In this document: positions 15,695-47,547 of the stretch, in pieces
How positions within the stretch are numbered: the stretch's first letter is position 1
Layout: each line of letters begins with the position of its first letter
DNA from: Anaeramoeba ignava BMAN
Lineage: Eukaryota > Protista > Anaeramoebae
Reading direction: 5' to 3'
Length of the DNA: 64,000 bases
NCBI GenBank assembly: GCA_028826165.1
Contig: JAPDFW010000092.1
Location: 558,001 to 622,000 of the forward strand
Notes under the pieces: generated by a model
The model's database searches: none
Seen by the model: the letters and a program-made list of their open reading frames with translations, nothing else
Told to the model about the DNA's origin: nothing
Program-made: the position numbers and the translations under genes

Positions 15695-16224
15695 TCTTTT
15701 ATTTATTTAATTTAATAATTAATAATAATACTATTAAAAAAAAAAAAAGAAAGAGAAAATTGAAAAGAAAAAAAATTAAAAAAAAAATTAAAAAAAAATT
15801 GAAAAGAAAAAAATTTTTTTCTCTAATTGTTTTCTTATTGGATTTATTTTAATTTTGTTTTTATTTTTATTTTTATTTTTATTTTTGTTTTTATTTTTAT
15901 TTTTGGATCCTTGATCTTCTTTCATTTAAAAAATTAATTTATAAAAAGGGTAATTTTTTTGGAAATGGTATTTTTGCTTTTTATTTAATTAAATATAAAA
16001 AAAATTAATTCGATTTTTATTTATATTTTTTAATTTAAATTTAATTAAAAAAAAAATTTTTTTCTTTTTCTTTTTCTTTTTTTTAATTAATAAAAAAAAA
16101 TTCCAATTTACAATTAATTTTTTTTATTTTAAGTTTTAGAAATAATTTATAGATTAAAAGAAAAAAAAGAATTAATACTTAAAATTTAAATTATTGATTT
16201 TATTTCAGAAAAAAAACTTATCTA

Positions 16225-16725
16225 ATTTTAATTAAAAAAATATAAAAATCTGTAATTACATTAATTAATATAATTTAAATATTTTGTTATTAAATATTAT
16301 TTTTAAATTAATTCCACAAATTTCCTTTTATTTAGATCAAGTTAACAATCCAAAAATTTTCAATTTAAAAATATTTAATTAAAAAAATATAAAAATTTAT
16401 AATTACATTGATTAATATAATTTAATTATTTTGTTATTAAATATTATTTTTAAATTAATTCCACAAATTTCCTTTTTATTTAGATCAAGTTAACAATCCA
16501 AAAATTTTCAATTTAAAAATATTTAATTAAAAAAATATAAAATTTATAATTACATTAATTAATATAATTTAATTATTTTATTATTAAATATAATTTTAAA
16601 TAATTCCTTAATTTATTTTAAATTAATATAAATCTAGAAATTAATATAAATTTATTTAAAAATTTTAATATTTTTTTAATTAAAATTTACAATTACATTA
16701 ATTAATATAATTTAATTAATTTTTC
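16225..16725. repeat. AT-rich satellite A-related array (two 148-bp variant units plus ~1 canonical unit)
   Basis: gatcaagttaac at 16335 and 16483; 16540-16720 matches the unit of the 25.4-27.5 kb array in the same orientation. Confidence 0.8.
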
Positions 16726-16771
16726 TTTTAATTTATCTATTAATAAATAATTTAAATTTAATTATTATTAA

Positions 16772-17220
16772 TTTCTATTCTTATTTTTTATATTTATATG
16801 TTAAATATTTAAATAATAAAATATTTAAATCTAAAACATTAAATTATTATTTTAATAATAAAATTAATTAATAAATTATATTTTAAATTAATTTATAAAT
16901 TAAATATTAAATTAAATCTATTCTTATTTTTATATTTATATGTTTAATATTTAAATAATAAAATATTTAAATCTAAAACATTAAATTATTATTTTAATAA
17001 TAAAATTAATTAATAAATTATATTTTTAAATTAATTTATAAATTAAATATTAAATTAAATCTATTCTCATTTTTATATTTATATGTTTAATATTTAAATA
17101 ATAAAATATTTAAATCTAAAACATTAAATTATTATTTTAATAATAAAATTAATTAATAAATTATATTTCTAAATTAATTTATAAATTAAATATTAAATTA
17201 AACTTATTCTCATTTTTTAT
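16772..17220 (+). repeat. AT-rich tandem repeat B, ~143-bp unit, ~3 copies (outer end of left arm)
   Basis: ctaaaacattaaatt at 16831, 16973 and 17116. Confidence 0.85.
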
Positions 17221-17553
17221 ATTTTTTCATTTTTCATTTTTTTCCTTTTTTTAAATAAAAAAAATAATTTTAACTAAGTAAATATTATTTAAAAAAAATT
17301 AAATATAAAAATATCTAATTAAACATAAAAATAATAATAAAAACATTCCAATAATCAAAATATTTATAAATTATTAATTAAAATAAAATTTATTTAATCA
17401 AAAAAAATTGAAAAGCAAAAATTTATTTTTCCTTTTTTTTATTTAATAAAATAATAAAAATATTCAATTAAACATCAATTATTTATCTAAATTATTTCAA
17501 TTATTAAAATATTTATTAATTATTTATTAAAATTAATTAGGATATTCCAGAAA

Positions 17554-20500
17554 ATGGATCCATCAATTTGTCCAAAATGTTTCCAAAATTATTCACAAGA
17601 AAGAAAGCCAATGATTATTTGTCAAGAAGGACATTCAATCTGTGGAGATTGTGTGAAAAAAATTGATAGTTGCCCTTTTTGCAGAAATTCTTTTAATGAT
17701 TTTAAACCAATTTTAAATCGCAATTTATTACAAGTTGTAAAGACATTCAAGTTACAATCAAAAGAACAAAAAGTTCCATTTATTCCATTGTCAGAATTAG
17801 AAGTTGAACCAAAACCATTTACTATAGGAGGAAGTGCTCAAATTTATAAAGGAAAATTTAAAGGAAAAGATGTTGTTGTCAAGAGAATGATGGTTATGAA
17901 TGATGAAAAATCAAATCAACAATTTGAAAACGAACTTAAATTAGCAATGAAATTTGAACATCCTTCAATTATTAAAATGTATGGAAAAACAGAAATGGAT
18001 AAAATGGTTGCACTTGTGATTGAATTTGCGAATCAAGGAGATTTAAGTAGCAAAATTCCAAGTTTAACATTTGAAGAACAAGTTGATTATTCTTTGCAAA
18101 TTATTGAAGGGATAAGAGTTTTACATTCAAATTCAATTATTCATCGTGATTTGAAACCTCCAAACATTTTGATAATCGATAATCATCCTAAAATTGCTGA
18201 TTTTGGAATTTCAAAAGTGAAAGAACATACTCTGAGAGTTACTTCAGTCATCATTTCATTTGATTATTCAGCTCCCGAACTTTTCCAAAAAGAGAATATT
18301 TATGATACTTCTTGTGATATTTTTAGTTTATCAATGATTTTATATTCAATTTTCTCAAAGAAAGAACCTTTCGGAAATTTGCATCCTGTTATGATTCCTG
18401 TGAAAGTAACACAAGGTGAAAGACCCGAATTTCCAAATGATTTCCCAAAAGAGTTAGCTAAAGTGATTGATAAAGGATGGAGTACAAATCCAAAAGAAAG
18501 ATCTTCATTGAACGAATTCACTCAATGTTTAGAAAGAATAAAACCTCAAAGTAATTCTTTTTTTCAATGAGATGTATTCAACTAACAAAGCAAAATCTAT
18601 TTTCTTTTAATCATATTTAATTTTCATAAACAATTAATGAAATTCTCAAAATAACAGAATCGATTCTACCAATTTCCCCCAACAATTTTCCTCCTTCAAA
18701 ACCTTCTAATAATAGAGCTAATATATCTCCACCTGTAATTTACAATACATCTTCAAATTTTTCAAAATCAAAATCAAAATCAAAATCAAAATCAAAATCA
18801 AAATCAAAATCAAAATCAAAATTCAAATTCAAAATCAATTAAATTCAAAATCAATTAAATTCAAAATAGACTGTTAAATTTGTGAAGAAAACTTTTGGAA
18901 TTGCTCAACATGATTTTCAAGCATCAAATCCAACAGAATTATCGTTTGCATTTGGAGATGAAGTTGAAATTTTAGCACAACATCAAGATGGATGGGGAGA
19001 TGCAAAATTGAACGGAAAAGCAGGACTTGTACCTCTAAGTTACTTAGATATAGTTGAAAAAACAGTAAAAATGACACCACCATCGACACCTAAATCACGA
19101 ATCCCACGAAAACAAATCGATAAATCAAATCAATTCCCAAAACCAAAATCACCAATATCTAATTTAAGAAAAAGAGAAACAAGCCAAAATCAAAATCAAA
19201 ATCAAATTCAAAATCAAATTCAAAATCAAATTCAAAATCAAATTCAAAATCAAAATCAAAATCAAAATCAAAATCAAAATCAAAATCGAAATCGAAATCA
19301 AAATCAAAATAAAAATCAATTTCCTAAATCAAATCAATTCCCAAAACCAAAATCACCAATATCTAATTTAATAAAAAGAGAAACAAGCCAAAATCAAAAT
19401 CAAAATCAAAATCAAAATCAAAATCAAAAATCAAATCAAATTCAAATTCAAATTCAAAATCAAAATAAAAATAAAAATCAAAATCAAAATCAAAATAATA
19501 ATAAAAATCAAAATAAAAATAAAAATCAATTTCCTAAATCAAATCAATTCCCAAAACCAAAATCACCAATATCTAATTTAATAAAAAGAGAAACAAGCCA
19601 AAATCAAAATCAAAATCAAAACCAAAATCAAAATCAAAATCAAATTCAAATTCAAAATCAAAATCAAAATCAAATTCAAAATCAAAATAAAATTGAAATT
19701 CAATCAACAGAAAAAACAATAAATTTTTTACAAGAACTTTCAAATAAAATTCAACAACATGATAAAAGTAAATCAAAAAAAAAAAAGGAAATTAAATTAA
19801 ATTAAATTGAATTAAATTAAATTAAATAATTTTAATTAATTTATTTAATTAATATTTGATTTATAAAAAAAATAATTTAATTTTACAAAAAAACAAATCA
19901 AAAAGGAAAAACAAAAGAATTAATTGAAATTGATGAATATTTTATTCTTAAATGTATGAATAATTTTCCAACAAATGAAATTATTCAAGAAAATTCATGT
20001 TTTGCTTTAAGAAAATTTACTGAAACAAACAAAAGTAAAATTCAAAAATTAATTTATTTCCAAAACAAAAAGAAAAAAGAAATATTAAATTCAAAATTCA
20101 AAATTCAAAATTCAAAATTCAAAAAAATAGAAAAATCAATTCAATTTGAAAATTTAAATGGAATTTATTTAATTTTGAAAGCAATGAAAAATTTCCCAAA
20201 TAATCAAGAAATTCAATTTCAATCTTTTTCAATTTTTATTAATATTGGAAAAGAAAAAGGTAAATCAATTTATTTTTCCAAAATTTTTTCATTAACAAAA
20301 AAGGAAAATAATCAATTTATTAATAAAATTAATCAATAAAATCAAATTCAAAATTAAAATTAAAATCAAAATCAAAATCAAAATCAAAATCAAAATCAAA
20401 ATCAAAATCAAAATCAAAATCAAAATCAAAATTCAAATTCAAAATCAAAATTAAAATTTAAAATCAAATTCAAAATCAAAATCAAAATCAAAATCAAAAT

Positions 20501-21176
20501 CAAAATCAAAATCAAAATCAAAATCAAAATCAAAATCAAAATCAAAATCAAAATCAAAATCAAATTCAAAATCAAAATCAAAATCAAAATCAAATTCAAA
20601 ATCAAAATCAAAATCAAAATCAAAATCAAAATCAAAATCAAAATCAAAATCAAAATCAAAATCAAATTCAAAATCAAATTCAAAATCAAAATCAAATTCA
20701 AAATCAAATTCAAAATCAAATTCAAATTTAAAATCAAATTCAAAATAGAAAATCAAAACAAAATTAAAGAATTATCTGGAATTGAAATAATTATTTCATC
20801 AATAATTAAATTTGAAAATGATAAAAATTTAAAAAAACAAGGATTTAAAGCTTTATCAAATTTAGGATTGAAAAATAAAGGTAAAAATTATAAAAAAATA
20901 AATTCCAAATTTTTTCTTTCAAAAATAAATTAAATTTTTCAATTCATTCTTCTTTTTCCAAAAAAAACAAAAAACAAAAACAACATTTATTTATTTAGAA
21001 ATTCAAAATCAAATCAAAACAAAGAAAGGTAAAACAAAACATTTTCCTTTTTTATTTCTTTTAACAATTTTTAACAAAACAAATTCATTCATTTTTTCAT
21101 TTATATTTTATTCCATTCTTTTTTTTACTATTATTAATAATTGGATATTTAAATTCCACAAAACAAAACAAAAACA

Positions 21177-21207
<31 letters not shown>

Positions 21208-23395
21208 CAAAACAAAACAAAACAAAACAAAACAAAACAAAAACAATTCAAAATTTCCATTCTTTTTCTTCTTTTTAAAATTTGATAAAAAAAATCCAAA
21301 AAATTTGGATGAAAAAGAATATTCATTCAAAGAATTGAAAATAGAAGATTTTAGAAAAATTGAAAAAGATGTAAATTATTTTGATTTTTGTTAAAATTAT
21401 TTAAAAGAAAAAAAATCAATTATCTAATCTAATATAATATAATATAATATAATCTAATCTAATCTAATCTAATCTAATCTAATCTAATCTAATCTAATCT
21501 AATCTAATCTAATCTAATCTAATATAATCATAAAAAATTTTTTGATTTTATTCTTTTATTTATTTTTTATTGGAAAATTTAAATAGGTTCCTGAAGATTC
21601 TGATTATGTATTATTTATTTAACAAAAAAACAAAAAACTCAAGATTTTTTTAAAAGAGAAAAAACAAAACGAATTTATTCAATTTATTTTAATTTTTGGA
21701 AATAATTTAAATCAATAATTTAATTTTTTTAATTTCTTTTTAACAATCCAAAATTTTTTAATCATCAAATATTTTATATATTTATATATTTATTTGGAAA
21801 AGATAAATCTATTTCCAAATTTTAAATTTATCAAAATGAAAAAATCAAAAATGAAAAATTAATTTCTTTTATATCCAAAATTAAAATTGAATTGAATTGA
21901 ATTAAATTGAATTGAATTATTAAGAGAAAAAAGGGAAAAAATAATGAATTAGTTTTATTATGAATATTTCATTATTTTTATTTGAATTTCTTTTAAGTAA
22001 ATTTTTTTTAAATTAAATTATTTTTTATTATTTCCAAAATAGAAAAATATTGAGAAATTATTATTTAAATCCAAATTTTATTTTATTATTATTTTTATTA
22101 TTATTGAATAAATTTAATCTCATTCTCCTTTTATTTTGTTTTATTTATTGAAATAATTAATTAATTTTTTTTTGATTAAAGAAATTATTTTTAGATTTCT
22201 TCTCAATTTAAATTCCACTTTTTTTCTTTTTTTCTTTTTGATTTTCCATTTTTTTTTCCTTTTCAAAATAATAAAATTTAAATTGAATTAAAAATATTTA
22301 TTTCCAAAAGAAAAAAAAAAAAAGAAAAAGAAATAATAAATTAAATCATTCTCCTTTTATTTTATTTTTTGATTGGAAATTGTTTTTTTATTTTGAAAAA
22401 TATCCTTTTAGATTCATTTGAAGATTATTCTTCTTGGAGGAGATAATATTGGAAAAAGTTGTGTTTTTAATAGGTTTATTTATAATACTTTTGTGAATAC
22501 TATACCAACATTAGGAGTTGATTTCAAGGAAATATTTTTGGAAGTGAATGGAAAAATAATTAAACTTCAAATTTGGGATATAGCTGGTCAAGGTTTGTTT
22601 ATAATTTCTTTTTAAATCAAAATCAAAATTAAAATTAAAATTTATTCCCAAAAATAATAACCAAATCAAAAACAAAAGGAAAATTTAAATCAATTATGAA
22701 ATATTTCTTTCCTTTTTTTTTAATTGAAAAAAAATAAGAATTATTTAAATTTATTTTCTAAAATTTAATTATTTAATTTATTATTTAATTAACAAAATAT
22801 TTCTTTATTTTTTTATTTTGGAATTAATTTCCCAATTTCTTTCCTAATTTATTTTTTTTATTTCATTTTTAGCACGTTTCCGTTCAATTTCAAAAATTTT
22901 TGTAGAATTTTTATTTTAAATTTATTTTCAAATTTTTAGAATATTAATTATCTCAAAATTAAATATAAAAAAAATTTCCAAAAAAATTCCAAAAAATTAA
23001 TTATTTTTTTTTCTTTTTTATTTAAACAAAATTAAAATTGATTTAAATCAAAAAAAACAATTTCCAAAAAATTAGCTTATTATCGAAATACAGATGGAGC
23101 TATGATAGTTTATGATATTACTAACAAAGATTCTTTTGATAATGATGTTAATTATTATATTAAAGATTTGGAAGAAAATGGTTATGAAAATATTCCAAAA
23201 ATATTAATTGGAAATAAATGTGATTTGGAAAAAGAAAGAGAAGTTTCAAAAGAAGAAGCTCAAAAATTTGCTGATGAAATTGGAATTCCATTTATTGAAA
23301 TTTCTGCAAAAAAAAATATTAATATTGATGAAGCTTTTTTTCTTTTAATAAAAATGATATTACAAAATCCAAAATCTAAAAATAAAATTAAATAA
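17554..23395 (+). CDS. Multi-exon RING - TKL-type kinase - SH3 - NQ-rich - 3xARM - Rab-like GTPase fusion protein
   Basis: Proposed exons: 17554-18550, 18658-18734, 18870-19767, 19906-20034, 20131-20259, 20749-20880, 20999-21028, ~21318-21370, 21587-21607, 22412-22592, ~22873-22901, 23076-23395. All GT-AG and in phase, except the switch-II mini-exon, which is off by one base. [23 protein letters not shown]; kinase [14 protein letters not shown]; SH3 [19 protein letters not shown]; Rab GKS, WDIAGQ, NKCD, EISAK. Confidence 0.7.
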
Positions 23396-23828
23396 TAAAT
23401 TGGGAAAGATTCAATTTAAGAAATAATTTGAATAATTATTAATTCAAAAAAAAAACAAAAATAATTATTTTATTCCATTTTTTTTTTGGATTAAATAATT
23501 AAAGAAAATTAAATTAAAATTTGATTTTAATTTTTTTGTTTTTTTAAATTTAGAAAATAAGAATGAAAATTTCCAAATTTGAATAAAAATAATATTTTCA
23601 ATTAATAAAATAAATTCAAAATCAAATTAATTTATTATTTAATTTATTATTTAAAAAATATTTTTATTCCACTTTTTTTTTTTGAATTAAAAATTTAATA
23701 AAAATAAAATTGATTATTTAAATAATAAAATAAATTTATTTTTCTTATTTATTGATTTAAAGAATTTAATTTGATTAAAAATAAATGAAAATAAAATTAA
23801 ATTTTGAAAAAAGAAAAGAAAATAATTT

Positions 23829-25223
23829 TTAAATGAAATAAGTTTCAAGTTCATCAACAATCCATAAATCATAAGAACCAGCTAAATAACTTTTAGATTC
23901 ATTTGTTCTTTCTTTAATTCCATTAGGTAGATTATAAGTAGTTCCAAAATCTGACCAACCAGGTTGTAAATTAGATTCCAAATAAAAATCTGGACCTCCT
24001 ATTCCAGATAAACCTCCTCCAAAATATGGACCAAATTTGGAAAAATTAGATACAACAGAAACTCTTTTTTTTCCTTTTTTAATTAGGAATTTCTCTGGTT
24101 TTCTATCTCCTTTAGCATTTCTTAATGAGAAAATAAATGCGTTTGGATCTTCAACTCCATATAAATTTTTATTAAATCCAATTTGAGTAAATCCTCCAAA
24201 AATAAAATTATCTTTTGTTTTGATAATAACTAATGTTTTTCCTTTATTATCAACTGCTTCATGCCATTTTTTAGAAGAAAATCCATTTATTTTTGCTGAA
24301 TATCCTAATTTCATTTTGGAAAAGAATTCATTATCATTTATCCATTCTTTTAATTTATTGAAATATTCTTTTTCTTTAATAATTTTTGATTTAAATCTTG
24401 ATTTGAAAATTAATGATTTTTCTTTTTCTTTTTCAATAAATTGATTTAATTCTTTTTCATTTTTAATATTTTGGAATTGAATTAATTTTTGTGAAATTTG
24501 ATTTGGAATTAATTTTTGTTTCAAAGTATCTTCAATTTCTTGTTTTGAAAAATCAATAAATCTGATTTTATCAATAATATTTGGAATTTGATTAATATTT
24601 GATTTATGTTTTCCCCATTTTATTATTGATTGGAATAGTTCAAATTCATTTATTAAAATAAAATCATTTAATAAAATTGAATTTAAATGATTTTCTTCAA
24701 GTTCAAGAAAAAATGAAGTTTTAATAAATTTATCAAAATTTTCAGAAATAAATTTATAAGAAGAATCTAATAATTGATTTAAGTTCATTCTTTCAGATAA
24801 TTTAAGAATATCAACAATAGTTTCAAATTGTAAATTATTTTTGATAAAATTTAAAGAAATTTCAATTAATTCATCAATTAAATATTTTGATGAAAAAATT
24901 AAAATTTCAATAACATTTTCTAAATTAATTTCAATTTTTCCTGAATAAAAATAATTCAAAATTGAAGATAGAATTGAACTTGAAACATCTTTTAAAATTA
25001 ATTTATTTTCTTGATATTCTTTCATTTTAGAATTAAAAAGAGATTTAAAATATTCACTTCTTGAAGAAAGAATTGATTTATGAGTTTTAAATGAAGTTTT
25101 ATTTTGTTCACAAATTATTTCAAAATCAAAATAACTTTCATATTGATTTTGATTTTGATTTTGATTTTGAAATAAATTTTTTAAATCATTTGAAAGTTTT
25201 TCTAAATTTAAATAAGTTTCCAT
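23829..25223 (-). CDS. BTB/POZ-(BACK)-TLDc domain protein
   Basis: BTB: DFEI..FKTHKSILSSRSEYFKSLFNSKMKE. TLDc: GFS..WHEAVDNKGKTLVIIKT..IFGGFT..AFIFSL..GPYFG..ELETY. Confidence 0.9.
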   Translation of the reverse strand: METYLNLEKLSNDLKNLFQNQNQNQNQYESYFDFEIICEQNKTSFKTHKSILSSRSEYFKSLFNSKMKEYQENKLILKDVSSSILSSILNYFYSGKIEINLENVIEILIFSSKYLIDELIEISLNFIKNNLQFETIVDILKLSERMNLNQLLDSSYKFISENFDKFIKTSFFLELEENHLNSILLNDFILINEFELFQSIIKWGKHKSNINQIPNIIDKIRFIDFSKQEIEDTLKQKLIPNQISQKLIQFQNIKNEKELNQFIEKEKEKSLIFKSRFKSKIIKEKEYFNKLKEWINDNEFFSKMKLGYSAKINGFSSKKWHEAVDNKGKTLVIIKTKDNFIFGGFTQIGFNKNLYGVEDPNAFIFSLRNAKGDRKPEKFLIKKGKKRVSVVSNFSKFGPYFGGGLSGIGGPDFYLESNLQPGWSDFGTTYNLPNGIKERTNESKSYLAGSYDLWIVDELETYFI

Positions 25224-25429
25224 TTTAAATAAAAAATTTAAAAATAAAAAAAATGAAAAAAAATAAAAAATGAAAATTATTTTAATTTAATATTTAATTT
25301 GGAATTAATTCTATTTTATATATTTTATTAATATTTCTTTATTCAAAATAATATAAAATAATTCTCAATAATTCAATAAAATTGATAAAATATTTTAAAT
25401 AAAAATATAAATTGAATTTTAATCTTTTT

Positions 25430-27530
25430 TAATAATATAGTTTAATTAATTTGTTATTAAATATAATTTATAAATAATTCTTTAATTTATTTTAAATTAA
25501 TATAAATCTAGAAATTAATATAAATTTGTTTAAAAATTTTAATATTTTTAATTAAAATCTATAATTATATTAATTAATAATATTTAATTATTTTATTATT
25601 AAATATAATTTATAAATAACTCCTTAATTTATTTTAAATTAATATAAATCTAAAAATTAATATAAATTTATTTAAAAATTTTAATATTTTTTTAATTAAA
25701 ATTTATAATTATATTAATTAATATAATTTAATTATTTTGTTATTAAATATAATTTATAATTAATTCTTTAATTTATTTTAAATTAATATAAATCTAGAAA
25801 TTAATATAAATTTATTTAAAAATTTTAATAATTTTTAATTAAAATTTGTAATTACATTAATTAATATAATTTAATTAATTTGTTATTAAATATAATTTAT
25901 AAATAATTCTTTAATTTATTTTAAATTAATATAAATATAGAAATTAATATAAATTTGTTTAAAAATTTTAATATTTTTTTAATTAAAATCTATAATTATA
26001 TTAATTAATATAATTTAATTAATTTGTTATTAAATATAATTTAAAATTAATTCTTTAATTTATTTTAAATTAATATAAATCTAGAAATTAATATAAATTT
26101 ATTTGAAAAATTTTAATATTTTTTTAATTAAAATTTATAATTATATTAAATAATATATTTTAATTAATTTGTTATTAAATATAATTTATAATTAATTCTT
26201 TAATTTATTTTAAATTAATATAAATCTAGAAATTAATATAAATTTATTTGAAAATTTTAATATTTTTTTAATTAAAATTTATAATTATATTAATTAATAT
26301 AATTTAATTAATTTGTTATTAAATATAATTTATAAATAATTCTTTAATTTATTTTAAATTAATATAAATTTAAAAATTAATATAAATTTGTTTCAAAATT
26401 TTTAATATTTTTTTAATTAAAATTTGTAATTATATTAATTAATATAATTTAATTAATTTGTTATTAAATATAATTTATAATTAATTCTTTAATTTATTTT
26501 AAATTAATATAAATTTAAAAATTAATATAAATTTGTTTAAAAATTTTAATATTTTTAATTAAAATTTATAATTACATTAATTTCTAAATTTTAATTAATT
26601 TGTTATTAAATATAATTTATAATTAATTCCTTAATTTATTTTAAATTAATATAAATCTAGAAATTAAAATAAATTTGTTTTAAAAATTTTAATATTTTTT
26701 TAATTAAAATCTATAATTACATTAATTAATAATATTTAATTAATTTGTTATTAAATATAATTTATAAATAATTCCTTAATTTATTTTAAATTAATATAAA
26801 TCAAATTAAAATAAAAATTTTGAAAATTTTAATATTTTTTTAATTAAAATTTGTAATTACATTAATTAATATAATTTAATTATTTTGTTATTAAATATAA
26901 TTTAAAATTAATTCCTTAATTTATTTTAAATTAATATAAATCTAAAAATTAAAATAAATTTGTTTAAAAATTTTAATATTTTTAATTAAAATTTATAATT
27001 ACATTAATTAATAATATTTAATTATTTTGTTATTAAATATAATTTATAAATAACTCCTTAATTTATTTTAAATTAATATAAATTTAGAAATTAATATAAA
27101 TTTATTTAAAAATTTTAATATTTTTTTAATTAAAATTTATAATTATATTAATTAATATAATTTAATTAATTTGTTATTAAATATAATTTATAATTAATTC
27201 TTTTAATTTATTTTAAATTAATATAAATTTAGAAATTAATATAAATTTGTTTCAAAATTTTTAATATTTTTTTAATTAAAATTTATAATTACATTAATTT
27301 CTAAATTTTAATTAATTTGTTATTAAATATAATTTAAAATTAATTCTTTAATTTATTTTAAATTAATATAAATTTAAAATTAATATAAATTTATTTAAAA
27401 ATTTTAATATTTTTTTAATTAAAATTTATAATTACATTAATTAACAAAATTTAAATAATTTGTTATTAAATATAATTTATAAATAATTCTTTAATTTATT
27501 TTAAATTAATATAAATCAAATTAAAATAAA
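25430..27530. repeat. AT-rich satellite A, ~144-bp unit, ~14-15 copies, directly upstream of Nup210
   Basis: ctagaaattaatataaattt-type anchor recurs at 25508, 25650, 25794, 26081, 26226 and onward; no unique spacers. Confidence 0.92.
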
Positions 27531-27577
27531 AAAATTTTTGAAAATTTTAGAAATCATTTTTTTTTTCCTCAAAATAA

Positions 27578-38458: not shown

Positions 38459-41400
38459 TTATTTCTTAAATAGAATCTTTTCCAATTTATCATTTAGCAA
38501 TTTTTCGTAGAAATTTGGACTTTGTAATATCGTTTTTATTAAAAGAAAAAAAGCTTCATCAATATTAATATTTTCTTTTGCAGAAGTTTCAATAAATGGA
38601 ATTCCATGTTTATCAGCAAATTTTTGAGCTTCTTCTTTTGAAACTTCTCTTTCTTTTTCCAAATCACATTTATTTCCAATTAATATTTTTGGAATATTTT
38701 CATCACTTTGTCCTTCCAAATCTTTAATAAAATAATTAACACGATTAACAAAAGAATATTTGTTAGTAATAACATAAAATATCATAACTCCATCTGCTCC
38801 TCGATAATAAGCTAATTTTTTGGAAATTGTTTTTTTTGATTTAAATCAATTTTAATTTTGTTTAAATAAAAAAGAAAAAAAATAATTAATTTTTTTGGAA
38901 TTTTTTTGGAATTTTTTTATATTTAATTTTGAGATAATTAATATTCTAAAAATTGGAAAATAAATTTAAAATAAAAATTACCTGAAAGGAGTGGATATGA
39001 ACGTTCTATAAAAATGAAATAAAAAATAAAAGAAATTGGGAAATTAATTCCAAAATAAAAAAATAAAGAAATATTTTGTTAATTAAATAATAAAATAAAA
39101 TAAATTAAATTTTGGAAAATAAATTTAAATAATTCTTATTTTTTTCAATTAAAAAAAAAAAGAAATATTTCATAATTGATTTAAATTTTCTTTTTGTTTT
39201 TGATTTCATTATTATTTTTGGGAATAAATTTGATTTTAATTTTGATTTTAATTTAAAAAGAAATTATAAACAAACCATGACCAGTTGTATCCCAAATTTG
39301 AAGTTTAATTATTTTTCCATTCACTTCCAAAAATATTTCCTTGTAATCAACTCCTATTGTTGGTGCAGAATCCACACGAAAACTATTAAAAATAAATCTA
39401 TTCACAATTTGAGTTTTTCCTGAATTATTTCCTCCAAGAAGAATAATCTTAAAATAAATCTAAAAGGATATTTTTCAAAATAAAAAAACAATTTCCAAAC
39501 AAAAAAAATAAAATAAAAGGAGAATGATTTAATTTATTATTTCTATTTCTTTTTCTTTTTCTTTTGGAAATAAATATTTTTAATTCAATTTTAATTTTAT
39601 TATTTTGAAAAGGAAAAAAAGTGGAAAATCAAAAAGAAAAAAAGAAAAAAAGTGGAATTTAAATTGAGAAGAAATCTAAAAATAATTTCTTTAATCAAAA
39701 AAAAATTAATTAATTATTTCAATAAATAAAACAAAATAAAAGGAGAATGAGATTAAATTTATTCAATAATAATAAAAATAATAATAAAATAATAAAATTT
39801 GGATTTAAATAATAATTTCTCAATATTTTTCTATTTTAGAAATAATAAAAAATAATTTAATTTAAAAAAAATTTACTTAAAAGAAATTCAAATAAAAATA
39901 ATGAAATATTCATAATAAAACTAATTCATTATTTTTTCCCTTTTTTTCTCTTAATAATTCAATTCAATTTCAATTTAATTTAATTCAATTTAATTTAATT
40001 TAATTTTAATTTTGGATATTTGTAAATTAATTTTTCATTTTTGATTTTTTCATTTTGATAAATTTAAAATTTGGAAATAGATTTATCTTTTCCAAAAATA
40101 AATAAATATAAAATATTTGATGATTTAAAAAATTTTGGATTGTTAAAAAAAAATTAAAAAAATTAAATTATTGATTTAAATTATTTCCAAAAATTAAAAT
40201 AAATTGAATAAATTTGTTTTGTTTTTTCTCTTTTAAAAAAATCTTGGTTTTTTGTTTTTTTGTTAAATAAATAATACATAATAAGAATCTTTAGGAACCT
40301 ATTTAAATTTTCCAATAAAAAATAAATAAAAGAATAAAATCAAAAAATTTTTTATGATTAGATTAGATTAGATTAGATTAGATTAGATTAGATTAGATTA
40401 GATTAGATTAGATTAGATTAGATTAGATTAGATAATTGATTTTTTTTCTTTTAAATAATTTTAACAAAAATCAAAATAATTTACATCTCCATATTTAATT
40501 TTTCTAAAATCTTTTATTTTCAATTCTTTGGATGAATATTCTTCTTTTAATTGTTGAATTTGAAGTTTTCTTTTATTTTCTTCTTCAAGTTTTCTTTTTT
40601 GTTCTTCAATTTTTCTTTTATATTCTTGAATTTGTTCATTCAAATTTTTTGGATTTTTTTTTATCAAATTTTAAAAAGAAGAAAAAGAATGGAAATTTTG
40701 AATTGTTTTTGTTTTGTTTTGTTTTGTTTTGTTTTGTTTTGTTTTTGTTTTGTTTTGTGGAATTTAAATATCCAATTATTAATAATAGTAAAAAAAAGAA
40801 TGGAATAAAATATAAATGAAAAAATGAATGAATTTGTTTTGTTAAAAATTGTTAAAAGAAATAAAAAAGGGAAAATGTTTTGTTTTACCTTTCTTTGTTT
40901 TGATTTGATTTTGAATTTCTAAATAAATAAATGTTGTTTTGGTTTTTTGTTTTTGGAAAAAGAAGAATGAACTGAAAAATTTAATTTATTTTTGAAAGAA
41001 AAAATTTGGAATTTATTTTTTTATAATTTTTACCTTTATTTTTCAATCCTAAATTTGATAAAGCTTTAAATCCTTGTTTTTTTAAATTTTTATCATTTTC
41101 AAATTTAATTATTGATAAAATAATTATTTCAATTCCAAATAATTCTTTAATTTTGTTTTGATTTTCTATTTTGATTTTGATTTTGAATTTGAATTTGAAT
41201 TTGAATTTGAATTTGAATTTGATTTTGATTTTGATTTTGAATTTGATTTTGATTTTGATTTTGAATTTGATTTTGATTTTAATTTTGATTTTGATTTTAA
41301 TTTTGAATTTGAATTTGATTTTGAATTTGATTTTGATTTTGAATTTGATTTATATTTTGATTTTGATTTTAATTTTGATTTTGATTTTGATTTTGAATTT

Positions 41401-44400
41401 TGATTTTGATTTTGAATTTGAATTTGAATTTGAATTTGAATTTGATTTTGAATTTGATTTTGATTTTGATTTTGATTTTGATTTTGATTTTGAATTTGAA
41501 TTTGATTTTGATTTTGATTTTGATTTTGATTTTGAATTTGATTTTGATTTTGATTTTGAATTTTGATTTTGATTTTGATTTTGATTTAGATTTAGATTTT
41601 AATTTTAATTTTAATTTTGATTTTGATTTTGATTTTGATTTTGATTTTGAATTTGATTTTGAATTTAATTTTGATTTTAATTTTGATTTTGATTTTGTTG
41701 ATTAATTTTATTAATAAATTGATTATTTTTCTTTTTTTGTTAATGAAAAAATTTTGGAAAAATAAATTGATTTACCTTTTTCTTTTCCAATATTAATAAA
41801 AATTGAAAAAGATTGAAATTGAATTTGTTGATTATTTGGGAAATTTATCATTGCTTTCAAAATTAAATCAATTCCATTTAAATTTTCAAATTGAATTGAT
41901 TTTTCTATTTTTTTGAATTTTGGATTTTGAATTTAATATTTCTTTTTTCTTTTTGTTTTGGAAATAAATTAATTTTTGAATTTTACTTTTGTTTGTTTCA
42001 GTAAATTTTCTTAAAGCAAAACATGAATTTTCTTGAATAATTTCATTTGTTGGAAAATTATTCATACATTTAAGAATAAAATATTCATCAATTTCAATTA
42101 ATTCTTTTGTTTTTCCTTTTTGTTTTGTTTTTTGTGAAATTAAATTATTTTTTTTATAAATCAAATATTAATTAAATAAATTAATTAAAATTATTCAATT
42201 TAATTCAATTCAATTTAATTTAATTTAATTCAATTTAATTTCCTTTTTTTTTTTGATTTACTTTTATCATGTTGTTGAATTTTATTTGAAAGTTCTTGTA
42301 AAAAATTTGTTGTGTTTTCTGTTGATTGAATTTCTATTTTTGGTTTTTGATTTTTAATTTCATTTTGAATATTTTGAATATTTTTGATTTCTTGATCAAT
42401 TTTTGAATAAAATTCATTTTTTCTTTTTTCAATTTCATTATTAAATTCTTGAATTATTTTTTCATTTTCATTTAAATTTTCATTTTTAATTTCAATTTCT
42501 TGAATTTTCTTTTCAATTTTTCCCAAATATTCATTTTATTTAAATGGAATTATATTTTTTATTTCTTCAATTATTTTATCAATTTCAATTTTATTTTGAA
42601 TTTGATTTTGATTTTTATTTTTATTTTTATTTTTATTTTGAATTTGAATTTGAATTTTATTTTTATTTTTATTTTGATTTTTATTTTGATTTTTATTTTT
42701 ATTTTGATTTTGATTTTAATTTTTATTTTGATTTTGATTTTGAATTTTGATTTTGAATTTTGATTTTGATTTTGATTTTGAATTTGAATTTGAATTTGAT
42801 TTTGATTTTGATTTTGAATTTGATTTTGATTTTGATTTTGAATTTGAATTTGATTTTGATTTTGATTTTGATTTTAATTTTGAATTTGAAGTTGAATTTG
42901 ATTTTGATTTTGAATTTGATTTTGATTTTGAATTTGATTTTGATTTTGATTTTGATTTTGATTTTGATTTTGAATTTGATTTTGAATTTGATTTTGATTT
43001 TGAATTTGATTTTGATTTTGAATTTGATTTTGATTTTGATTTTGATTTTGATTTTGATTTTGAATTTGATTTTGAATTTGATTTTGATTTTGAATTTGAT
43101 TTTGATTTTGAATTTGATTTTGATTTTGAATTTGAATTTGAATTTGATTTTGATTTTGATTTTGATTTTGATTTTGATTTTGATTTTGATTTTGATTTTG
43201 ATTTTGAATTTGATTTTGAATTTGATTTTGAATTTGAATTTGATTTTGAATTTGTTGATTAATTTTATTAATAAATTGATTATTTTTCTTTTTTTGTTAA
43301 TGAAAAAATTTTGGAAAAATAAATTGATTTACCTTTTTCTTTTCCAATATTAATAAAAATTGAAAAAGATTGAAATTGGATTTGTTGATTATTTGGGAAA
43401 TTTTTCATTGCTTTCAAAATTAAATCAATTCCATTTAAATTTTCAAATTGAATTGATTTTTCTATTTTTTTGAATTTTGGATTTTGGATTTTGAATTTGA
43501 TATTTCTTTTTTGTTTTTGTTTTTCTTTTGAAAATAAATTAATTTTTGAATTTTACTTTTGTTTGTTTCAGTAAATTTTCTTAAAGCAAAACATGAATTT
43601 TCTTGAATAATTTCATTTGTTGGGAAATTATTCATACATTTAAGAATAAAATATTCATCAATTTCAATTAATTCTTTTGTTTTTCCTTTTTGTTTTGTTT
43701 TTTGTGAAATTAAATTATTTTTTTTATAAATCAAATATTAATTAAATAAATTAATTAAAATTATTCAATTTAATTCAATTCAATTTAATTTAATTTAATT
43801 CAATTTAATTTCCTTTTTTTTTTTGATTTACTTTTATCATTTTGTTGAATTTTATTTGAAAGTTCTTGTAAAAAATTTATTGTGTTTTCTGTTGATTGAA
43901 GAATTTCTATTTTTGGTTTTTGATTTTTAATTTCATTTTGAATATTTTGAATATTTTTGATTTCTTGATCAATTTTTGAATAAAATTCATTTTTTCTTTT
44001 TTCAATTTCATTATTAAATTTTTGAATTATTTTTTCATTTTCATTTAAATTTTCATTTTTAATTTCAATTTTTTGAATTTTCTTTTCAATTTTTCCCAAA
44101 TATTCATTTTGTTTGAATGGAATTATATTTTTTATTTCTTCAATTATTTTATCAATTTCAATTTTATTTTGAATTTGATTTTTATTTTTATTTTTATTTT
44201 TATTTTTATTTTGAATTTGAATTTGAATTTTATTTTTATTTTGATTTTGATTTTTATTTTTATTTTTATTTTTATTTTGATTTTGAATTTGATTTTTATT
44301 TTGATTTTTATTTTTATTTTTATTTTTATTTTGATTTTGAATTTGATTTTTATTTTGATTTTGATTTTGATTTTTATTTTGATTTTGATTTTGATTTTGA

Positions 44401-46529
44401 TTTTTATTTTGATTTTTATTTTTATTTTGGTTTTGATTTTGATTTTGATTTTGAATTTGATTTTGATTTTTATTTTGATTTTGAATTTGATTTTGATTTT
44501 GATTTTTATTTTGATTTTGATTTTGATTTTTATTTTGATTTTGAATTTGATTTTTATTTTGATTTTGATTTTGATTTTTATTTTTATTTTTATTTTGATT
44601 TTTATTTTTATTTTGATTTTGATTTTGATTTTGATTTTGATTTTTATTTTTATTTTTATTTTGATTTTGATTTTGATTTTGATTTTGATTTTGATTTTGA
44701 TTTTGATTTTGATTTTGATTTTTATTTTTATTTTGATTTTTATTTTGATTTTTATTTTGATTTTTATTTTGATTTTTATTTTTATTTTTATTTTTATTTT
44801 GATTTTGAATTTGATTTTGAATTTGATTTTTATTTTGATTTTGATTTTGATTTTTATTTTGATTTTGATTTTTATTTTGATTTTGATTTTGATTTTTATT
44901 TTTATTTTTATTTTTATTTTTATTTTGATTTTGATTTTGATTTTGATTTTTATTTTTATTTTTATTTTTATTTTGATTTTTATTTTGAATTTTATTTTGG
45001 TTTTGATTTTGATTTTGATTTTGATTTTGATTTTGATTTTGATTTTGATTTTGATTTTGATTTTGATTTTGATTTTGATTTTGATTTTGATTTTGATTTT
45101 TGATTTGTTGAATAAATTGTTTAAATTCTTCTAAATTTTCTTTTCTTTTTTTTTCAAATTGATTTTCAAATTCATTTTTAAATTTTTGAATTTTTTCTTC
45201 AAGTAATTTTAAATCTTCTTCTGTTTTTGATTTTGGAAAATTTATTAATTCTTGATATTGTTTATCAATTTCTTCCAAATTGTTATTTTTTATTTTTTTG
45301 AATTTATTTTGAATTTTTTGAATTTCTTTTTGAAAATTTTCTAAATCTTTTTTTCTATTTTGTTCAAATAAATATTTCAAATTAATAATTATTTTCTTAA
45401 CTTGTTCTAAATATTCTTTTTTCATTTTTTCATTTTCATTTTGAATTAATTGTTGAAATTTTTCTTCAATTTCTTTTTTCCATTTTTCATATTCTTTTTG
45501 AATTTCTTCAATTTGTTTTTTAATTTTTTCTAATTTTTCTTTTTCTTTTTGGGTTGTTTTTTGTTGATAATAAAGTTGATTAATTGTAAATTCTGATTTT
45601 TGATTTTCTTGTTCAAATTCTTCAATATTTGAATTTAATAAAATAATTTTATTTTGAAGTTGAGAAATTGATTTATTTTTGATTTGTTGAATTTGAATTT
45701 GAAATTGATTAATTGATTTTGTTTGTGAAATTTGATTTAATAAATTTGAAAAAGAATTTTCAATTTCATTGTTTTCATTTTCATTTTGATTTGTTTCAAA
45801 TTTATTTAATTTTATCAATTTTTTTTGATTATTTTGATTCAATTTTTGTTTAATTTGTTGAATAATTTGGAATTGATTTGAAAGATTTTGATTTAAAGAA
45901 ATTAATCCAATAAAATTGTAAATTTGATTTTGATTTTGATTTAAATATTTATCAAAATTTGGATTTGAAATGATAAATTGAATATTTTGGAAAATAAATT
46001 TTTCACAATTTTGAGAAAGATTTTTTGAATTAATTTTTTGAGATTTAAAATAAATTTCTAAAATATTTTCAATATTAAAAATTGATTGAATTTCAAGTTC
46101 AATTTTGAATTGAATTTCTTTTAATTTAATTTGATTTGCAAATTGAAAATATTTATCAAATTTTTGTTTATCAAATTCAAATTTTCCATTATAAAAAAAT
46201 TTAATAATTGGTTTAACAATTTCAGAACTAAAATTATTAAAATAAATTGAATTAAATTTATTTTCTCTTCTATTTATCATAAAATATTTTGAACGAGCTT
46301 CTAAAATTGATTTATGACAAGGAATTAAAATTTTATCTTTTCCACAATAAATTTGAAAATCTGAAGTTTTTTTATTTCCAAACATTAAACCAATTTGTTT
46401 ATTTGCTTGATTTATTAAGAATTTATTAAATTTTTTAATTTTGGATTGAATTTGTTGATTTGAATTTGAATTTGAATTTGAATTTGAATTTGAATTTGAA
46501 TTTGAATTTGAATTTGAATTTGAATTCAT
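38459..46529 (-). CDS. Multi-exon BTB - coiled-coil - NQ/NK - 5xARM - Rab-like GTPase fusion protein
   Basis: Proposed exons: 46529-43832, 43685-43557, 43461-43333, 42115-41987, 41904-41776, 41165-41034, 40918-40889, ~40625-40485, 40298-40278, 39459-39276, 39005-38982, 38811-38459; GT-AG and phase-compatible. [23 protein letters not shown]; Rab [37 protein letters not shown]. Confidence 0.72.
41700..44200. repeat. Internal ~1.57-kb direct tandem duplication (end of exon 1 plus two ARM exons)
   Basis: 41700-42600 matches 43257-44170; ORFs 41886-42164 and 43462-43734 are near-identical. Confidence 0.9.
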
Positions 46530-46899
46530 TTCTTTTTTTGTTTTTTTTTTGAAAATAAAAATATTTTAATTAATAAATTATTTATTATTTTGATTATTTA
46601 AATGTTTTTAATAAATAATTTATGTTTAATTTATTATTTTTATATTTAATTTTTGGTTTATTTTATTAAATAAAAAAAAAGGAAAAATAAATTTTTGCTT
46701 TCCAATTTTTTTTGATTAAATAAATTTTATTTTAATTAATAATTTATAAATATTTTGATTATTGAAATGTTTTTATTATTATTTTTATGTTTAATTAGAT
46801 ATTTTTATATTTAATTTTTTTTAAATAATATTTACTTAATTAAAATTATTTTTTTTATTTAAAAAAAAGGAAAAAAATGAAAAATGAAAAAATATAAAA

Positions 46900-47455: not shown

Positions 47456-47547
47456 TTTCAAAATTGATTTTTTTGAAATTAAAATTTTATCTTTTTTTTT
47501 GAATTAAATTGAATTAATATTAATTTGGAAATTTGTTTTTAAATTTA

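What the first reader, a model, noticed from the sequence alone, without database searches (positions are those of the whole stretch)
22412..23395. Fused Rab domains diverge at P-loop and switch surfaces while their introns stay nearly identical: possible integrated decoy
Seen: left vs right P-loop region [11 protein letters not shown] vs [11 protein letters not shown]; switch [14 protein letters not shown] vs [14 protein letters not shown]; G3/switch [16 protein letters not shown] vs [14 protein letters not shown] (catalytic Q replaced by H). The core ([47 protein letters not shown]) and the flanking introns (21610-22410 vs 39460-40275) look almost unchanged by eye. Neither copy has a C-terminal Cys prenylation motif. 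Known: Rab1 switch regions are targeted by effectors of intracellular bacteria such as Legionella, and plant NLRs use integrated decoy domains. Inference: this is a rapidly diversifying bait domain coupled to ubiquitination or kinase signalling.
Basis: partly seen in the sequence, partly recalled or inferred. Interest (0 to 1): 0.8.

Follow-up and report, generated by a model that had tools for sequence, protein, structure and literature searches.

The report
Fast-evolving Rab domain in duplicated genes
In the anaerobic amoeba Anaeramoeba ignava, recently duplicated genes end in a Rab-type switch domain whose partner-binding surfaces changed about three times faster than the neighbouring introns, which points to selection for new binding partners; the idea that it is bait for bacterial effectors is untested, and one of the two copies looks broken.

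Summary
The window carries an inverted segmental duplication (19185-25542 vs 44422-34414). Both arms end in a four-exon Rab8/Rab1-like domain.

- **Divergence:** Rab exons differ at 13.1%, introns and spacer at about 1-4%, and the ARM/linker exons of the same gene at 1.4%.
- **Selection signal:** against a neutral expectation built from the non-coding mutation spectrum, amino-acid-changing differences are 3.05x expected and silent ones 1.06x.
- **Where the changes fall:** 35 of 61 residues in the P-loop, helix 1, switch I, G3, switch II, the alpha3-beta5 loop and the tail, against 16 of 113 elsewhere.
- **Prenylation:** no copy has a C-terminal Cys.

- The left copy's switch II micro-exon is 29 nt, not 24, so it shifts the frame. 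Its tail is also frameshifted.
- The family has four loci: a third is dead and a fourth is canonical.
- Most acceleration lies on the right (intact) copy's side.
- Blocks are shared mosaically among the copies.

The right copy is publicly annotated as "rab8" of Anaeramoeba ignava (ARM + coiled coil + Rab). Fusion to the BTB or RING-kinase-SH3 ORFs rests only on an in-frame splice path. No RNA run was listed. The decoy reading is untested.

This scan has already noted the same pattern in other Rab arrays of this genome.

The parts
17554..18570 (+). Left gene, candidate N-terminal module: RING finger + protein kinase ORF (338 aa)
   Evidence: Pfam Pkinase 160 bits, Sina_RING 29.3 bits. Its link to the Rab exons is inferred, not shown.
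18882..19767 (+). Left gene: SH3 + poly-NQ ORF up to a candidate GTAAAT donor. The duplication junction (about 19185) lies in the (CAAAAT)n coding repeat.
   Evidence: Pfam SH3_1 42 bits. Self-BLAST gives the junction. A phase-1 donor follows 19767.
19906..21027 (+). Left gene: ARM-repeat exons (19906-20034, 20133-20258, 20748-20879) and linker exon (20998-21027), with satellite-filled introns
   Evidence: Mapped from public protein P0005. Only 5/369 mismatches to the right copy.
21333..21370 (+). Left gene: remnant of the coiled-coil exon. A 90-nt in-frame deletion relative to the right copy removed the homologous acceptor and most of the exon, so the remnant is 38 nt against 140 nt.
   Evidence: Alignment. 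Coordinates checked. The same short form appears in P3's public model P0152.
21587..21607 (+). Left Rab micro-exon E0 (7 codons, VPEDSDY), the N-terminal edge of the G domain
   Evidence: Homologous to residues in P0005. 2/21 mismatches.
22412..22592 (+). Left Rab exon A: beta1, P-loop, helix 1, switch I, interswitch and G3 (DIAGQ). One codon is missing in switch I.
   Evidence: Pfam Ras 56 bits. 25/181 mismatches to the right copy.
22873..22901 (+). Left Rab exon B (switch II): 29 nt instead of 24, with the donor displaced, so the frame shifts
   Evidence: Four-way alignment. Frame check.
23076..23395 (+). Left Rab exon C: RabF4/F5, G4 NKCD and G5 SAK. The tail is frameshifted by a 2-nt deletion and ends early, without Cys.
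   Evidence: Pfam Ras 104 bits. Closest solved structure Rab8A, E = 3e-25. Tail.
43800..46529 (-). Right gene, candidate N-terminal module: BTB + coiled coil + poly-NQ ORF (909 aa). A candidate donor follows 43832.
   Evidence: Pfam BTB 42 bits. P3 and P4 share this N-terminus.
40485..43685 (-). Right gene: ARM exons (including a 1570-nt tandem duplication of the unit), linker exon 40890-40919 and coiled-coil exon 40485-40624
   Evidence: P0005 mapping. Self-BLAST. Coordinates checked.
38459..40298 (-). Right Rab domain: E0 40278-40298, exon A 39276-39459 ([13 protein letters not shown]), exon B 38982-39005 (switch II rewritten to RSYPLLS), exon C 38459-38811 (ends ...ILFKK, no Cys)
   Evidence: Identical to public protein P0005, 'small gtp binding protein rab8 [Anaeramoeba ignava]'. 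Pfam Ras 168 bits over the whole profile. Rab8A E = 1e-44.
23396..23828 (.). Spacer between the convergent Rab and BTB-TLDc genes, 99% identical between the arms. It serves as an internal neutral control.
   Evidence: 4/431 mismatches.

Best explanation
This is a young, species-specific family of four loci in Anaeramoeba ignava. It encodes scaffold proteins made of ARM repeats, a coiled coil and a C-terminal Rab8/Rab1-like G domain with no lipid anchor. The proteins probably extend N-terminally into a BTB module (right copy, P3, P4) or, after a segmental duplication joined in a poly-NQ repeat, into a RING-kinase-SH3 module (left copy).

The G domain cannot be membrane-anchored by prenylation. 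It most likely works as a built-in binding or regulatory module that presents Rab-like switch surfaces to Rab partners.

After duplication, selection favoured amino-acid divergence on those surfaces: the P-loop x-positions, helix 1, switch I, G3, switch II, the alpha3-beta5 loop and the tail. The fold-bearing core, the ARM exons, the introns and the spacer stayed almost unchanged.

Blocks of variants have been exchanged among the copies, and the family turns over quickly:
- P4 is canonical.
- The right copy is intact but strongly derived. It has Gln67 replaced by His, switch II rewritten, and the Asp of the VYDIT motif replaced by Val. It is probably hydrolysis-deficient or insensitive to nucleotide state.
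- The left copy keeps canonical residues but is frame-broken at switch II and in the tail.
- P3 is dead.

Shown: the sequence pattern, the rates, the motif states and the ARM + coiled coil + Rab gene model of the right copy. Inferred: selection as the cause, the N-terminal fusions, and the binding-module function.
For: Rates:
- Exon versus non-coding divergence is 13.1% versus 3.8% (an upper bound). The ARM/linker exons of the same gene are at 1.4%.
- Spectrum-corrected, N is 3.05x and S 1.06x the expectation. Poisson P = 6e-11 for the total; binomial P = 0.017 for the N:S ratio.
- NG86 omega is 2.3-3.1. ML omega is 1.4 and 2.3.

Placement and lineage:
- Replacements fall at 35/61 residues in switch and specificity elements versus 16/113 elsewhere (mapped with the Rab8A alignment).
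- Acceleration is strongest on the intact right copy: 23-32 exon changes versus 13-14 non-coding changes.

Donors and identity:
- No donor was found elsewhere in the 42.8-Mb genome for the divergent blocks.
- Family membership and Rab identity: Pfam Ras 168 bits, Rab8A E = 1e-44.
- The public models P0005 and P0152 confirm the micro-exon structure.
- Neither the Rab exons nor the coiled-coil exon holds an in-frame ATG, so the domain must be joined to upstream exons.
Against: - The excess of N over S alone is only modestly significant (P = 0.017), and only 4-5 silent differences were seen.
- Twelve codons carry more than one change, and the differences come in blocks. Multi-nucleotide events or short conversion tracts can inflate dN/dS.
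- Two of the four copies are broken, so part of the change may be decay.
- The left lineage shows only about a 1.8x excess.
- There is no transcript, population or biochemical evidence. The N-terminal fusions are unconfirmed, and the public annotation does not join them.
Confidence: 0.55

Rival explanations
1. Relaxed constraint plus concerted evolution. The copies are redundant and decaying. Frequent gene conversion between the arms and P3 keeps most of the segment near-identical. The divergent blocks are simply tracts that escaped homogenisation or were imported from paralogues since lost.
For: - P3 carries frameshifts and a 30-nt deletion, and the left copy has a frameshifting exon B and a frameshifted tail.
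- Variants are shared in blocks (runs test P = 5e-5), with conflicting groupings: 12 exon sites unite R with P3 and 9 unite L with P3, against 7 and 1 in non-coding sequence.
- P3's upstream part is R-like and its downstream neighbour L-like.
- The neighbouring TLDc gene switches from 94% to about 60% identity in mid-gene, which looks like recombination.
Against: - Neutral decay cannot exceed the neutral rate, yet N is 3x the non-coding expectation while S equals it.
- All divergent islands lie in Rab exons. None lies in more than 1.3 kb of intron and spacer, or in the ARM exons.
- The fastest lineage is the intact copy.
- No donor exists in the assembly.
Confidence: 0.22
2. One reading: integrated decoy. 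The anchor-less Rab domain mimics a host Rab that bacterial effectors target. It reports their attack to the attached BTB (cullin-3) or kinase module, and it diversifies in an arms race.
For: - Accelerated change sits at switch I and II, the surfaces that Legionella-type effectors modify (established knowledge).
- The lipid anchor is lost in every copy, and the right copy has lost the catalytic Gln.
- The family shows birth-and-death dynamics.
- Anaeramoeba species live with bacterial symbionts. A congener hosts a Legionellales symbiont with a Dot/Icm system and 184 predicted effectors (preprint 10.64898/2026.04.11.717937; PMC11550330).
Against: - There is no evidence of any interaction with bacteria or induction on challenge.
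- A. ignava's known symbionts are Desulfobacter held in symbiosomes, not Legionellales.
- Fusion to the signalling modules is unconfirmed.
- The same signature fits ordinary paralogue specialisation within a Rab family already known to be hugely expanded in this genus.
Confidence: 0.1
3. Assembly or annotation artefact: the inverted duplication or the exon differences come from mis-assembly or sequencing error.
For: The genome is extremely AT-rich and repeat-laden. No reads could be laid on the window.
Against: - The arms differ by structured changes: 3 versus 5 ARM units, different N-terminal genes, and 90-nt and 10-nt indels. These are not homopolymer noise.
- Two further loci on C82 and C70 show the same exon structure.
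- Independent public gene models match the right copy and P3 exactly.
Confidence: 0.03

Closest known systems
Rab8 / Rab1 / Rab10 small GTPases
   Same: Full-length match to the Ras/Rab G domain (Pfam Ras 168 bits). The best solved relatives are human Rab8A (E = 1e-44), Rab10 and Rab1A. G1, G2, G4 and G5 are present. P4 keeps all five RabF motifs.
   Different: There is no C-terminal Cys for geranylgeranylation. The domain sits at the end of an ARM + coiled-coil protein. In the right copy the catalytic Gln is His, RabF3 is rewritten and the RabF5 Asp is Val. The switch regions are the most variable parts rather than the most conserved.
Large Rab GTPases (Rab44, Rab45/RASEF, CRACR2A/Rab46); recalled from the literature, not tested here
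   Same: N-terminal accessory domains, then a coiled coil, then a C-terminal Rab domain in a single polypeptide.
   Different: Pfam finds no EF-hand. ARM repeats (and possibly BTB or RING-kinase-SH3) take its place. The family is confined to one species and is only a few percent diverged in neutral sequence.
RhoBTB, and the Rab-BTB-BTB fusions noted elsewhere in this genome by this scan
   Same: An atypical small-GTPase domain combined with a BTB (cullin-3 adaptor) module. The GTPase probably serves as a regulatory or recruiting element.
   Different: The order is reversed: a single BTB lies at the N-terminus and the GTPase at the C-terminus, with ARM and coiled coil between them. The GTPase is Rab-type. 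The BTB link is not confirmed by transcripts.
ROCO proteins such as LRRK2
   Same: ARM repeats with weak similarity to the LRRK2 ARM profile (27.0 bits in P0152, cut-off 26.2), a Roc/Ras-type G domain (Roc 87 bits) and, in the left copy, a kinase.
   Different: No COR domain. The kinase would lie N-terminal to the G domain. The G domain is clearly Rab rather than Roc (168 versus 87 bits).
Paralogues whose introns stay homogenised while selected exon sites stay different (primate red/green opsins) and tandem IRG GTPase decoys in mice; recalled, not tested
   Same: Exons diverge more than the flanking introns among young duplicates. A GTPase family shows diversification, gene conversion and pseudogenes.
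   Different: Here the target is the Rab switch surface in a free-living anaerobic protist. No ligand or antagonist is known.

Membership tests
Rab family of small GTPases | G1 P-loop GxxxxGK[ST], G2 Thr in switch I, G4 NKxD, G5 SAK | tested here: met
   Left copy: [22 protein letters not shown]. Right copy: [23 protein letters not shown]4 is likewise complete. Pfam Ras covers profile positions 1-161 of 162 in P0005.
Rab family of small GTPases | G3 DxxGQ with catalytic Gln | tested here: inconclusive
   Left copy DIAGQ and P4 DTAGQ meet it. The right copy has DTTGH (Gln67 of Rab8A aligned to His). P3 has DTPSQ.
Rab family of small GTPases | RabF1-F5 family motifs (IGVDF, KLQIW, RFRSIT, YYRGA, LVYDIT; Pereira-Leal and Seabra, recalled) | tested here: inconclusive
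   P4 has all five. The left copy has near-canonical versions, but exon B is out of frame. The right copy lacks RabF3 (RSYPLL) and has IFYVIT for RabF5.
Rab family of small GTPases | C-terminal Cys motif for geranylgeranylation | tested here: not met
   The tails end ...KNKIK (left)...ILFKK (right, P0005) and ...IQFKK (P4). None holds a Cys.
Large Rab GTPases (Rab44/45/46) | EF-hand domain N-terminal to a coiled coil and a C-terminal Rab domain | tested here: not met
   Pfam finds no EF-hand in P0005, the BTB ORF, or the kinase and SH3 ORFs. The charged heptad-like stretch before the Rab domain and the C-terminal Rab position do match.
ROCO (LRRK2-like) | Roc G domain followed directly by a COR domain | tested here: not met
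   No COR hit in any ORF or in P0005. The protein ends about 20 residues after the G domain.
RhoBTB | N-terminal Rho-type GTPase followed by tandem BTB domains | tested here: not met
   The GTPase is Rab-type and C-terminal. A single BTB sits in the upstream ORF.
Integrated decoy (concept from plant NLR-IDs) | Domain derived from a host protein that pathogen effectors target, fused to a sensing or signalling chassis | not testable with these tools
   Rab8/Rab1 ancestry is shown. Targeting by any bacterium is unknown. The fusion to BTB or kinase is only an in-frame splice path, and no RNA run was listed.
Integrated decoy (concept from plant NLR-IDs) | Accelerated, surface-focused amino-acid change with loss of the native activity | tested here: met
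   N is 3.05x the neutral expectation. Replacements are 35/61 versus 16/113. There is no prenyl Cys, and the right copy has Gln replaced by His. These features are necessary but not specific.

The most novel reading that the evidence does not exclude
The anchor-less Rab domain is a bait built into cullin-3 (BTB) and kinase scaffolds. These scaffolds would sense or sequester bacterial proteins that attack Rab switch regions. That would make it an amoebal counterpart of plant integrated decoys and of mouse tandem IRG decoys. The adjacent, co-duplicated and equally fast-diverging BTB-TLDc gene would act as a partner.
Probability: 0.1. Interest if true: 0.85.

Novelty: new variant of a known kind. 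Interest (0 to 1): 0.5.

Why it matters
Rab switch regions are normally the most conserved part of these proteins. Here they are the fastest-changing part of very young duplicates, while the introns beside them barely differ. That pattern is a direct record of selection acting on partner recognition.

Anaeramoeba keeps bacterial symbionts in an elaborate membrane system and has one of the largest Rab repertoires known (PMC11550330). Loci like this one show how new Rab-like specificities, or Rab mimics without a membrane anchor, arise, get joined to other signalling modules by segmental duplication, and are lost again.

If the domain binds bacterial or host trafficking factors, this four-locus set offers natural variants for testing. 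P4 is canonical, the right copy is derived, and the left copy and P3 are broken.

Tried and rejected
- **Transcript evidence.** The look-up of sequencing runs listed no run, so read laying could not be used. The left copy's exon B and the N-terminal fusions therefore stay unverified.
- **Donor search for gene conversion.** I ran protein and DNA searches of the whole genome with exons A and C of both copies, plus pattern searches with the right copy's switch II block and the R/P3 helix-1 block. Nothing outside the four-locus family came closer than the family members themselves.
- **Degenerate switch II pattern.** A degenerate pattern for the right copy's switch II peptide hit a 19/20-nt match on C72. 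That locus is a non-Rab repeat ORF, and I treat the match as probably chance.
- **C61 and C6 relatives.** They are 60-63% identical in exon C but have no BTB or coiled-coil similarity upstream, so they are outgroups, not family members.
- **Frame rescue for the left copy.** I looked for alternative donors or acceptors and found no canonical site. Only skipping exon B, or a P3-like internal acceptor, stays in frame, and both remove switch II.
- **Composition artefact.** G/C sites mutate faster in this AT-rich genome. Correcting for this reduces the excess from about 3.4x to about 2.1-2.3x per base class but does not remove it.
- **The look-up of encoding contigs for the A. ignava hit.** It returned nothing, because records of the window's own genome are withheld.
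- **Joined model.** I built, searched and folded no joined spliced model of the left copy. Continuous-domain work used the public protein P0005, and everything else was done exon by exon. I ran no structure prediction, because sequence matches to Rab8A already settle the fold.
Full report
**What is there**

The window is G000:C82:558001-622000 of a 42.8-Mb, 147-contig genome with about 18% G+C. The public protein P0005, 'small gtp binding protein rab8 [Anaeramoeba ignava]', maps exactly onto the right copy. It sits on a contig of 1,127,284 bp, the length of C82. The organism is therefore Anaeramoeba ignava, whose genome is reported as 80.65% A+T with a greatly expanded Rab family (PMC11550330).

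Self-comparison shows an inverted segmental duplication. The left arm is 19185-25542 and the right arm 44422-34414, at 86-94% identity over gapped alignments.

Each arm carries ARM-repeat exons, a linker exon, a coiled-coil exon and four Rab exons, and then a convergent BTB-TLDc gene.

| Rab exon | Left copy (+) | Right copy (-) |
|---|---|---|
| E0 | 21587-21607 | 40298-40278 |
| A | 22412-22592 | 39459-39276 |
| B | 22873-22901 | 39005-38982 |
| C | 23076-23395 | 38811-38459 |

**Check of the observation**

| Segment (left vs right) | Mismatches |
|---|---|
| Intron 21608-22411 | 2.4% |
| Spacer 23396-23828 | 0.9% |
| Exon A | 13.8% |
| Exon B | about 45% |
| Exon C | 10.6% |

Pooled, the Rab exons differ at 71/544 sites and non-coding columns at 50/1330. 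The non-coding figure is an upper bound, because indel-adjacent misalignment inflates it. Fisher P = 3e-12.

The ARM and linker exons of the same gene give a strong internal control. They differ at only 5/369 sites (1.4%), P = 6e-12 against the Rab exons. The excess is therefore specific to the Rab domain. It is not a property of exons or of the region.

**Is it more than composition or chance?**

G/C sites change more often than A/T sites here, and exons hold twice as much G+C. Per base class the exon excess is still 2.1-2.3x.

I used the non-coding substitution spectrum as the neutral model for the actual codons. It predicts 17.7 replacement and 3.8 silent differences. The observed numbers are 54 and 4. 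That gives N at 3.05x and S at 1.06x expectation, with Poisson P = 6e-11 for the total and binomial P = 0.017 for the N:S ratio.

Omega estimates:
- Nei-Gojobori: 2.4 for exon A and 3.1 for exon C.
- Maximum likelihood with codon frequencies: 1.42 for exon A and 2.27 for exon C.

Silent sites therefore date the copies like the introns do, while replacements run about three times faster. The N:S evidence alone is modest. The comparison with non-coding sequence and with the ARM exons is strong.

**Where the changes fall**

P0005's G domain aligns end to end with human Rab8A (E = 1e-44). Using that register, replacements between the left and right copies fall as follows.

| Element | Replaced / total |
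|---|---|
| P-loop | 3/8 |
| Helix 1 | 3/7 |
| Switch I | 7/13 |
| G3 | 3/5 |
| Switch II | 9/13 |
| alpha3-beta5 loop | 4/7 |
| C-terminal tail | 6/8 |
| Interswitch hairpin | 1/20 |
| beta5 + G4 | 0/12 |
| alpha4 region | 2/21 |
| alpha5 | 2/18 |

The first seven rows sum to 35/61. All other elements, including those not listed, sum to 16/113. The element boundaries are from my knowledge of Rab structure and are approximate.

The right copy has three notable substitutions:
- His at the catalytic Gln67 position.
- Pro at the Thr72 position of switch II.
- Val for the Asp of the VYDIT motif.

No copy has a C-terminal Cys.

1. *The family has four loci.*
   - P3 lies 34 kb upstream on the same contig (C82:546270...). 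It is dead: a 30-nt deletion, +1 and -1 frameshifts in exon C, and G3 DTPSQ. Its public model P0152 skips from G3 to beyond G4.
   - P4 on C70 has all canonical Rab motifs and an intact frame.
2. *The left copy's exon B shifts the frame.* It is 29 nt with a displaced donor, where the other three have 24 nt. With homologous GT-AG sites the left frame shifts and stops 9 codons into exon C. No canonical alternative site rescues it. Only skipping exon B, or a P3-like internal acceptor, stays in frame, and both delete switch II.
3. *The left copy has further defects.* It lacks one codon in switch I. It has a 2-nt deletion that truncates the tail. It shares a 90-nt in-frame deletion of the coiled-coil exon with P3.
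4. *Polarising with P4 shows where the acceleration lies*.

| Lineage | Exon changes | Non-coding changes |
|---|---|---|
| Right copy | 23-32 | 13-14 |
| R/P3 ancestor | 12 | 7 |
| P3 | 17-20 | 12-15 |
| Left copy | 16-22 | 18-28 |

   Exon counts are over 507 sites and non-coding counts over 1327 sites. The left copy is the conservative one.
5. *Variants come in blocks that group L with P3 in some places and R with P3 in others.* The runs test gives P = 5e-5. P3 is R-like upstream and L-like downstream. Exchange between paralogues has therefore occurred.

**Is the Rab domain fused?**

The Rab exons and the coiled-coil exon hold no in-frame ATG. The frames run on from exon to exon through canonical GT-AG sites. 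The public model P0005 joins ARM, coiled coil and Rab in one 363-aa protein.

That model starts at a Met inside an ARM repeat, so it is probably truncated at the N-terminus. Upstream, both arms offer a phase-1 GTAAAT donor and a phase-1 acceptor at the first ARM exon:
- Right copy: near the end of the BTB/poly-NQ ORF, with the exon ending at 43832 and the ARM exon starting at 43685.
- Left copy: near the end of the SH3/poly-NQ ORF, with the exon ending at 19767 and the ARM exon starting at 19906.

R, P3 and P4 share the BTB N-terminus. Only the left copy has RING-kinase-SH3. The duplication junction lies in the (CAAAAT)n coding repeat.

These N-terminal fusions are plausible but not shown. No RNA run was listed, and the public annotation does not join them.

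**Mechanism**

Neutral decay cannot outrun the neutral rate, and ancient divergence retained against conversion should carry proportionate silent change. Neither fits N = 3x with S = 1x.

All divergent islands lie in Rab exons. None lies in more than 1.3 kb of intron and spacer, or in the ARM exons.

Whole-genome searches found no donor for the divergent blocks.

The best reading is selection for amino-acid divergence at the Rab partner- and nucleotide-facing surfaces of an anchor-less, scaffold-embedded G domain. Inter-paralogue exchange and fast birth-and-death run alongside it. I give this reading 0.55.

The main rival is relaxed constraint plus mosaic conversion from lost donors (0.22). 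The biology of the genus makes it worth testing:
- Anaeramoeba species live with bacterial symbionts held in symbiosomes.
- A congener hosts a Legionellales symbiont with a Dot/Icm system and 184 predicted effectors.

**Comparison with what is known**

The domain is a Rab by sequence, but it fails the prenylation criterion. The right copy also fails the catalytic Gln and two RabF motifs.

The architecture resembles the large Rabs (coiled coil + C-terminal Rab) without their EF-hands. It resembles RhoBTB in reverse order if the BTB link is real. It has LRRK2-like ARM repeats only at borderline score, and no COR domain.

Outside A. ignava, no protein in either large search was more than 54% identical to exon C or more than 49% identical to P0005, and all of those are ordinary or multi-domain Rabs. 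The one 62% hit to exon C (P0043, 119 aa) is a short fragment of unrecorded source that probably corresponds to the C61/C6 outgroup loci of this genome. The family therefore appears lineage-specific.

I found no paper describing this pattern. Notes of this scan report the same signature in other Rab arrays of the same genome. I used them as leads only.

**Limits**

There are no reads, no transcripts and no population data. I built, searched and folded no joined spliced model of the left copy. Continuous-domain analyses used the public protein P0005, and all else was done exon by exon.

Noticed in passing
window 23829-25223 (-) vs 34736-36165 (+) and 37375-38034 (+): The convergent neighbour gene (BTB-BACK-TLDc) shows a sharper version of the same pattern. 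The BTB half is 94% identical between the arms, the TLDc half only 57-62%, and the spacer to the Rab gene 99%. The right arm holds two TLDc segments. P3's neighbour is 96% identical to the left one.
   Followed up: partly
window 38982-39005 (-) and G000:C72:261951-261970: The right copy's rewritten switch II exon shares 19 of 20 bases with a non-Rab repeat ORF on contig C72. The central 15-mer occurs only at these two places in the genome. This is probably chance, but a templated patch cannot be excluded.
   Followed up: partly
G000:C59:153700-168200 and G000:C81:344500-352600: Tandem arrays of Rab-like genes, spaced about 1.5 kb apart, have a second half lying in open frames of 340-415 aa. 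They are 44-55% identical to exon C. Earlier scan notes call them Rab-BTB-BTB fusions.
   Followed up: no
window 41140-43254 vs 42717-44825: A 1570-nt tandem duplication lies inside the right gene (93% identity). It adds ARM exons plus a copy of the poly-NQ-end exon. In these units the exons are identical and the introns differ, which is the opposite of the Rab exons.
   Followed up: partly
window 16224-17300, 25275-27583, 46811-47475: Arrays of a satellite of about 143 bp flank the duplicated arms and fill part of the 9.4-kb spacer. The copies at 16927-17303 and 46811-47187 are 92% complementary.
   Followed up: no
protein P0001 (public A. ignava model) and G000:C69:227697-228818: A public 593-aa model named 'actin' joins an actin (98% match on C69) to a BTB segment that is 54% identical to the right gene's BTB ORF. 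It is probably a merged gene model.
   Followed up: no
window 22873-22901, 38982-39005 and the P3, P4 homologues: The residue aligned with Rab8A Thr72 is Ser in the left copy and P3, Thr in P4 and Pro in the right copy. Thr72 is the LRRK2 phosphorylation site, as recalled from the literature. The left copy lies downstream of a kinase ORF and of ARM repeats with weak LRRK2-ARM similarity.
   Followed up: no
window 30131-34282 (+), 8647-9699 (+), 59214-62549 (+): Ordinary single-copy genes sit in and around the palindrome: a NUP210-like protein with Ig-like domains (Pfam hits), and two ORFs that look by eye like Nop56/58 and Mot1/BTAF1, though I did not scan them. The NUP210-like gene, in the spacer between the arms, has the highest G+C of the window (36-38%).
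   Followed up: no
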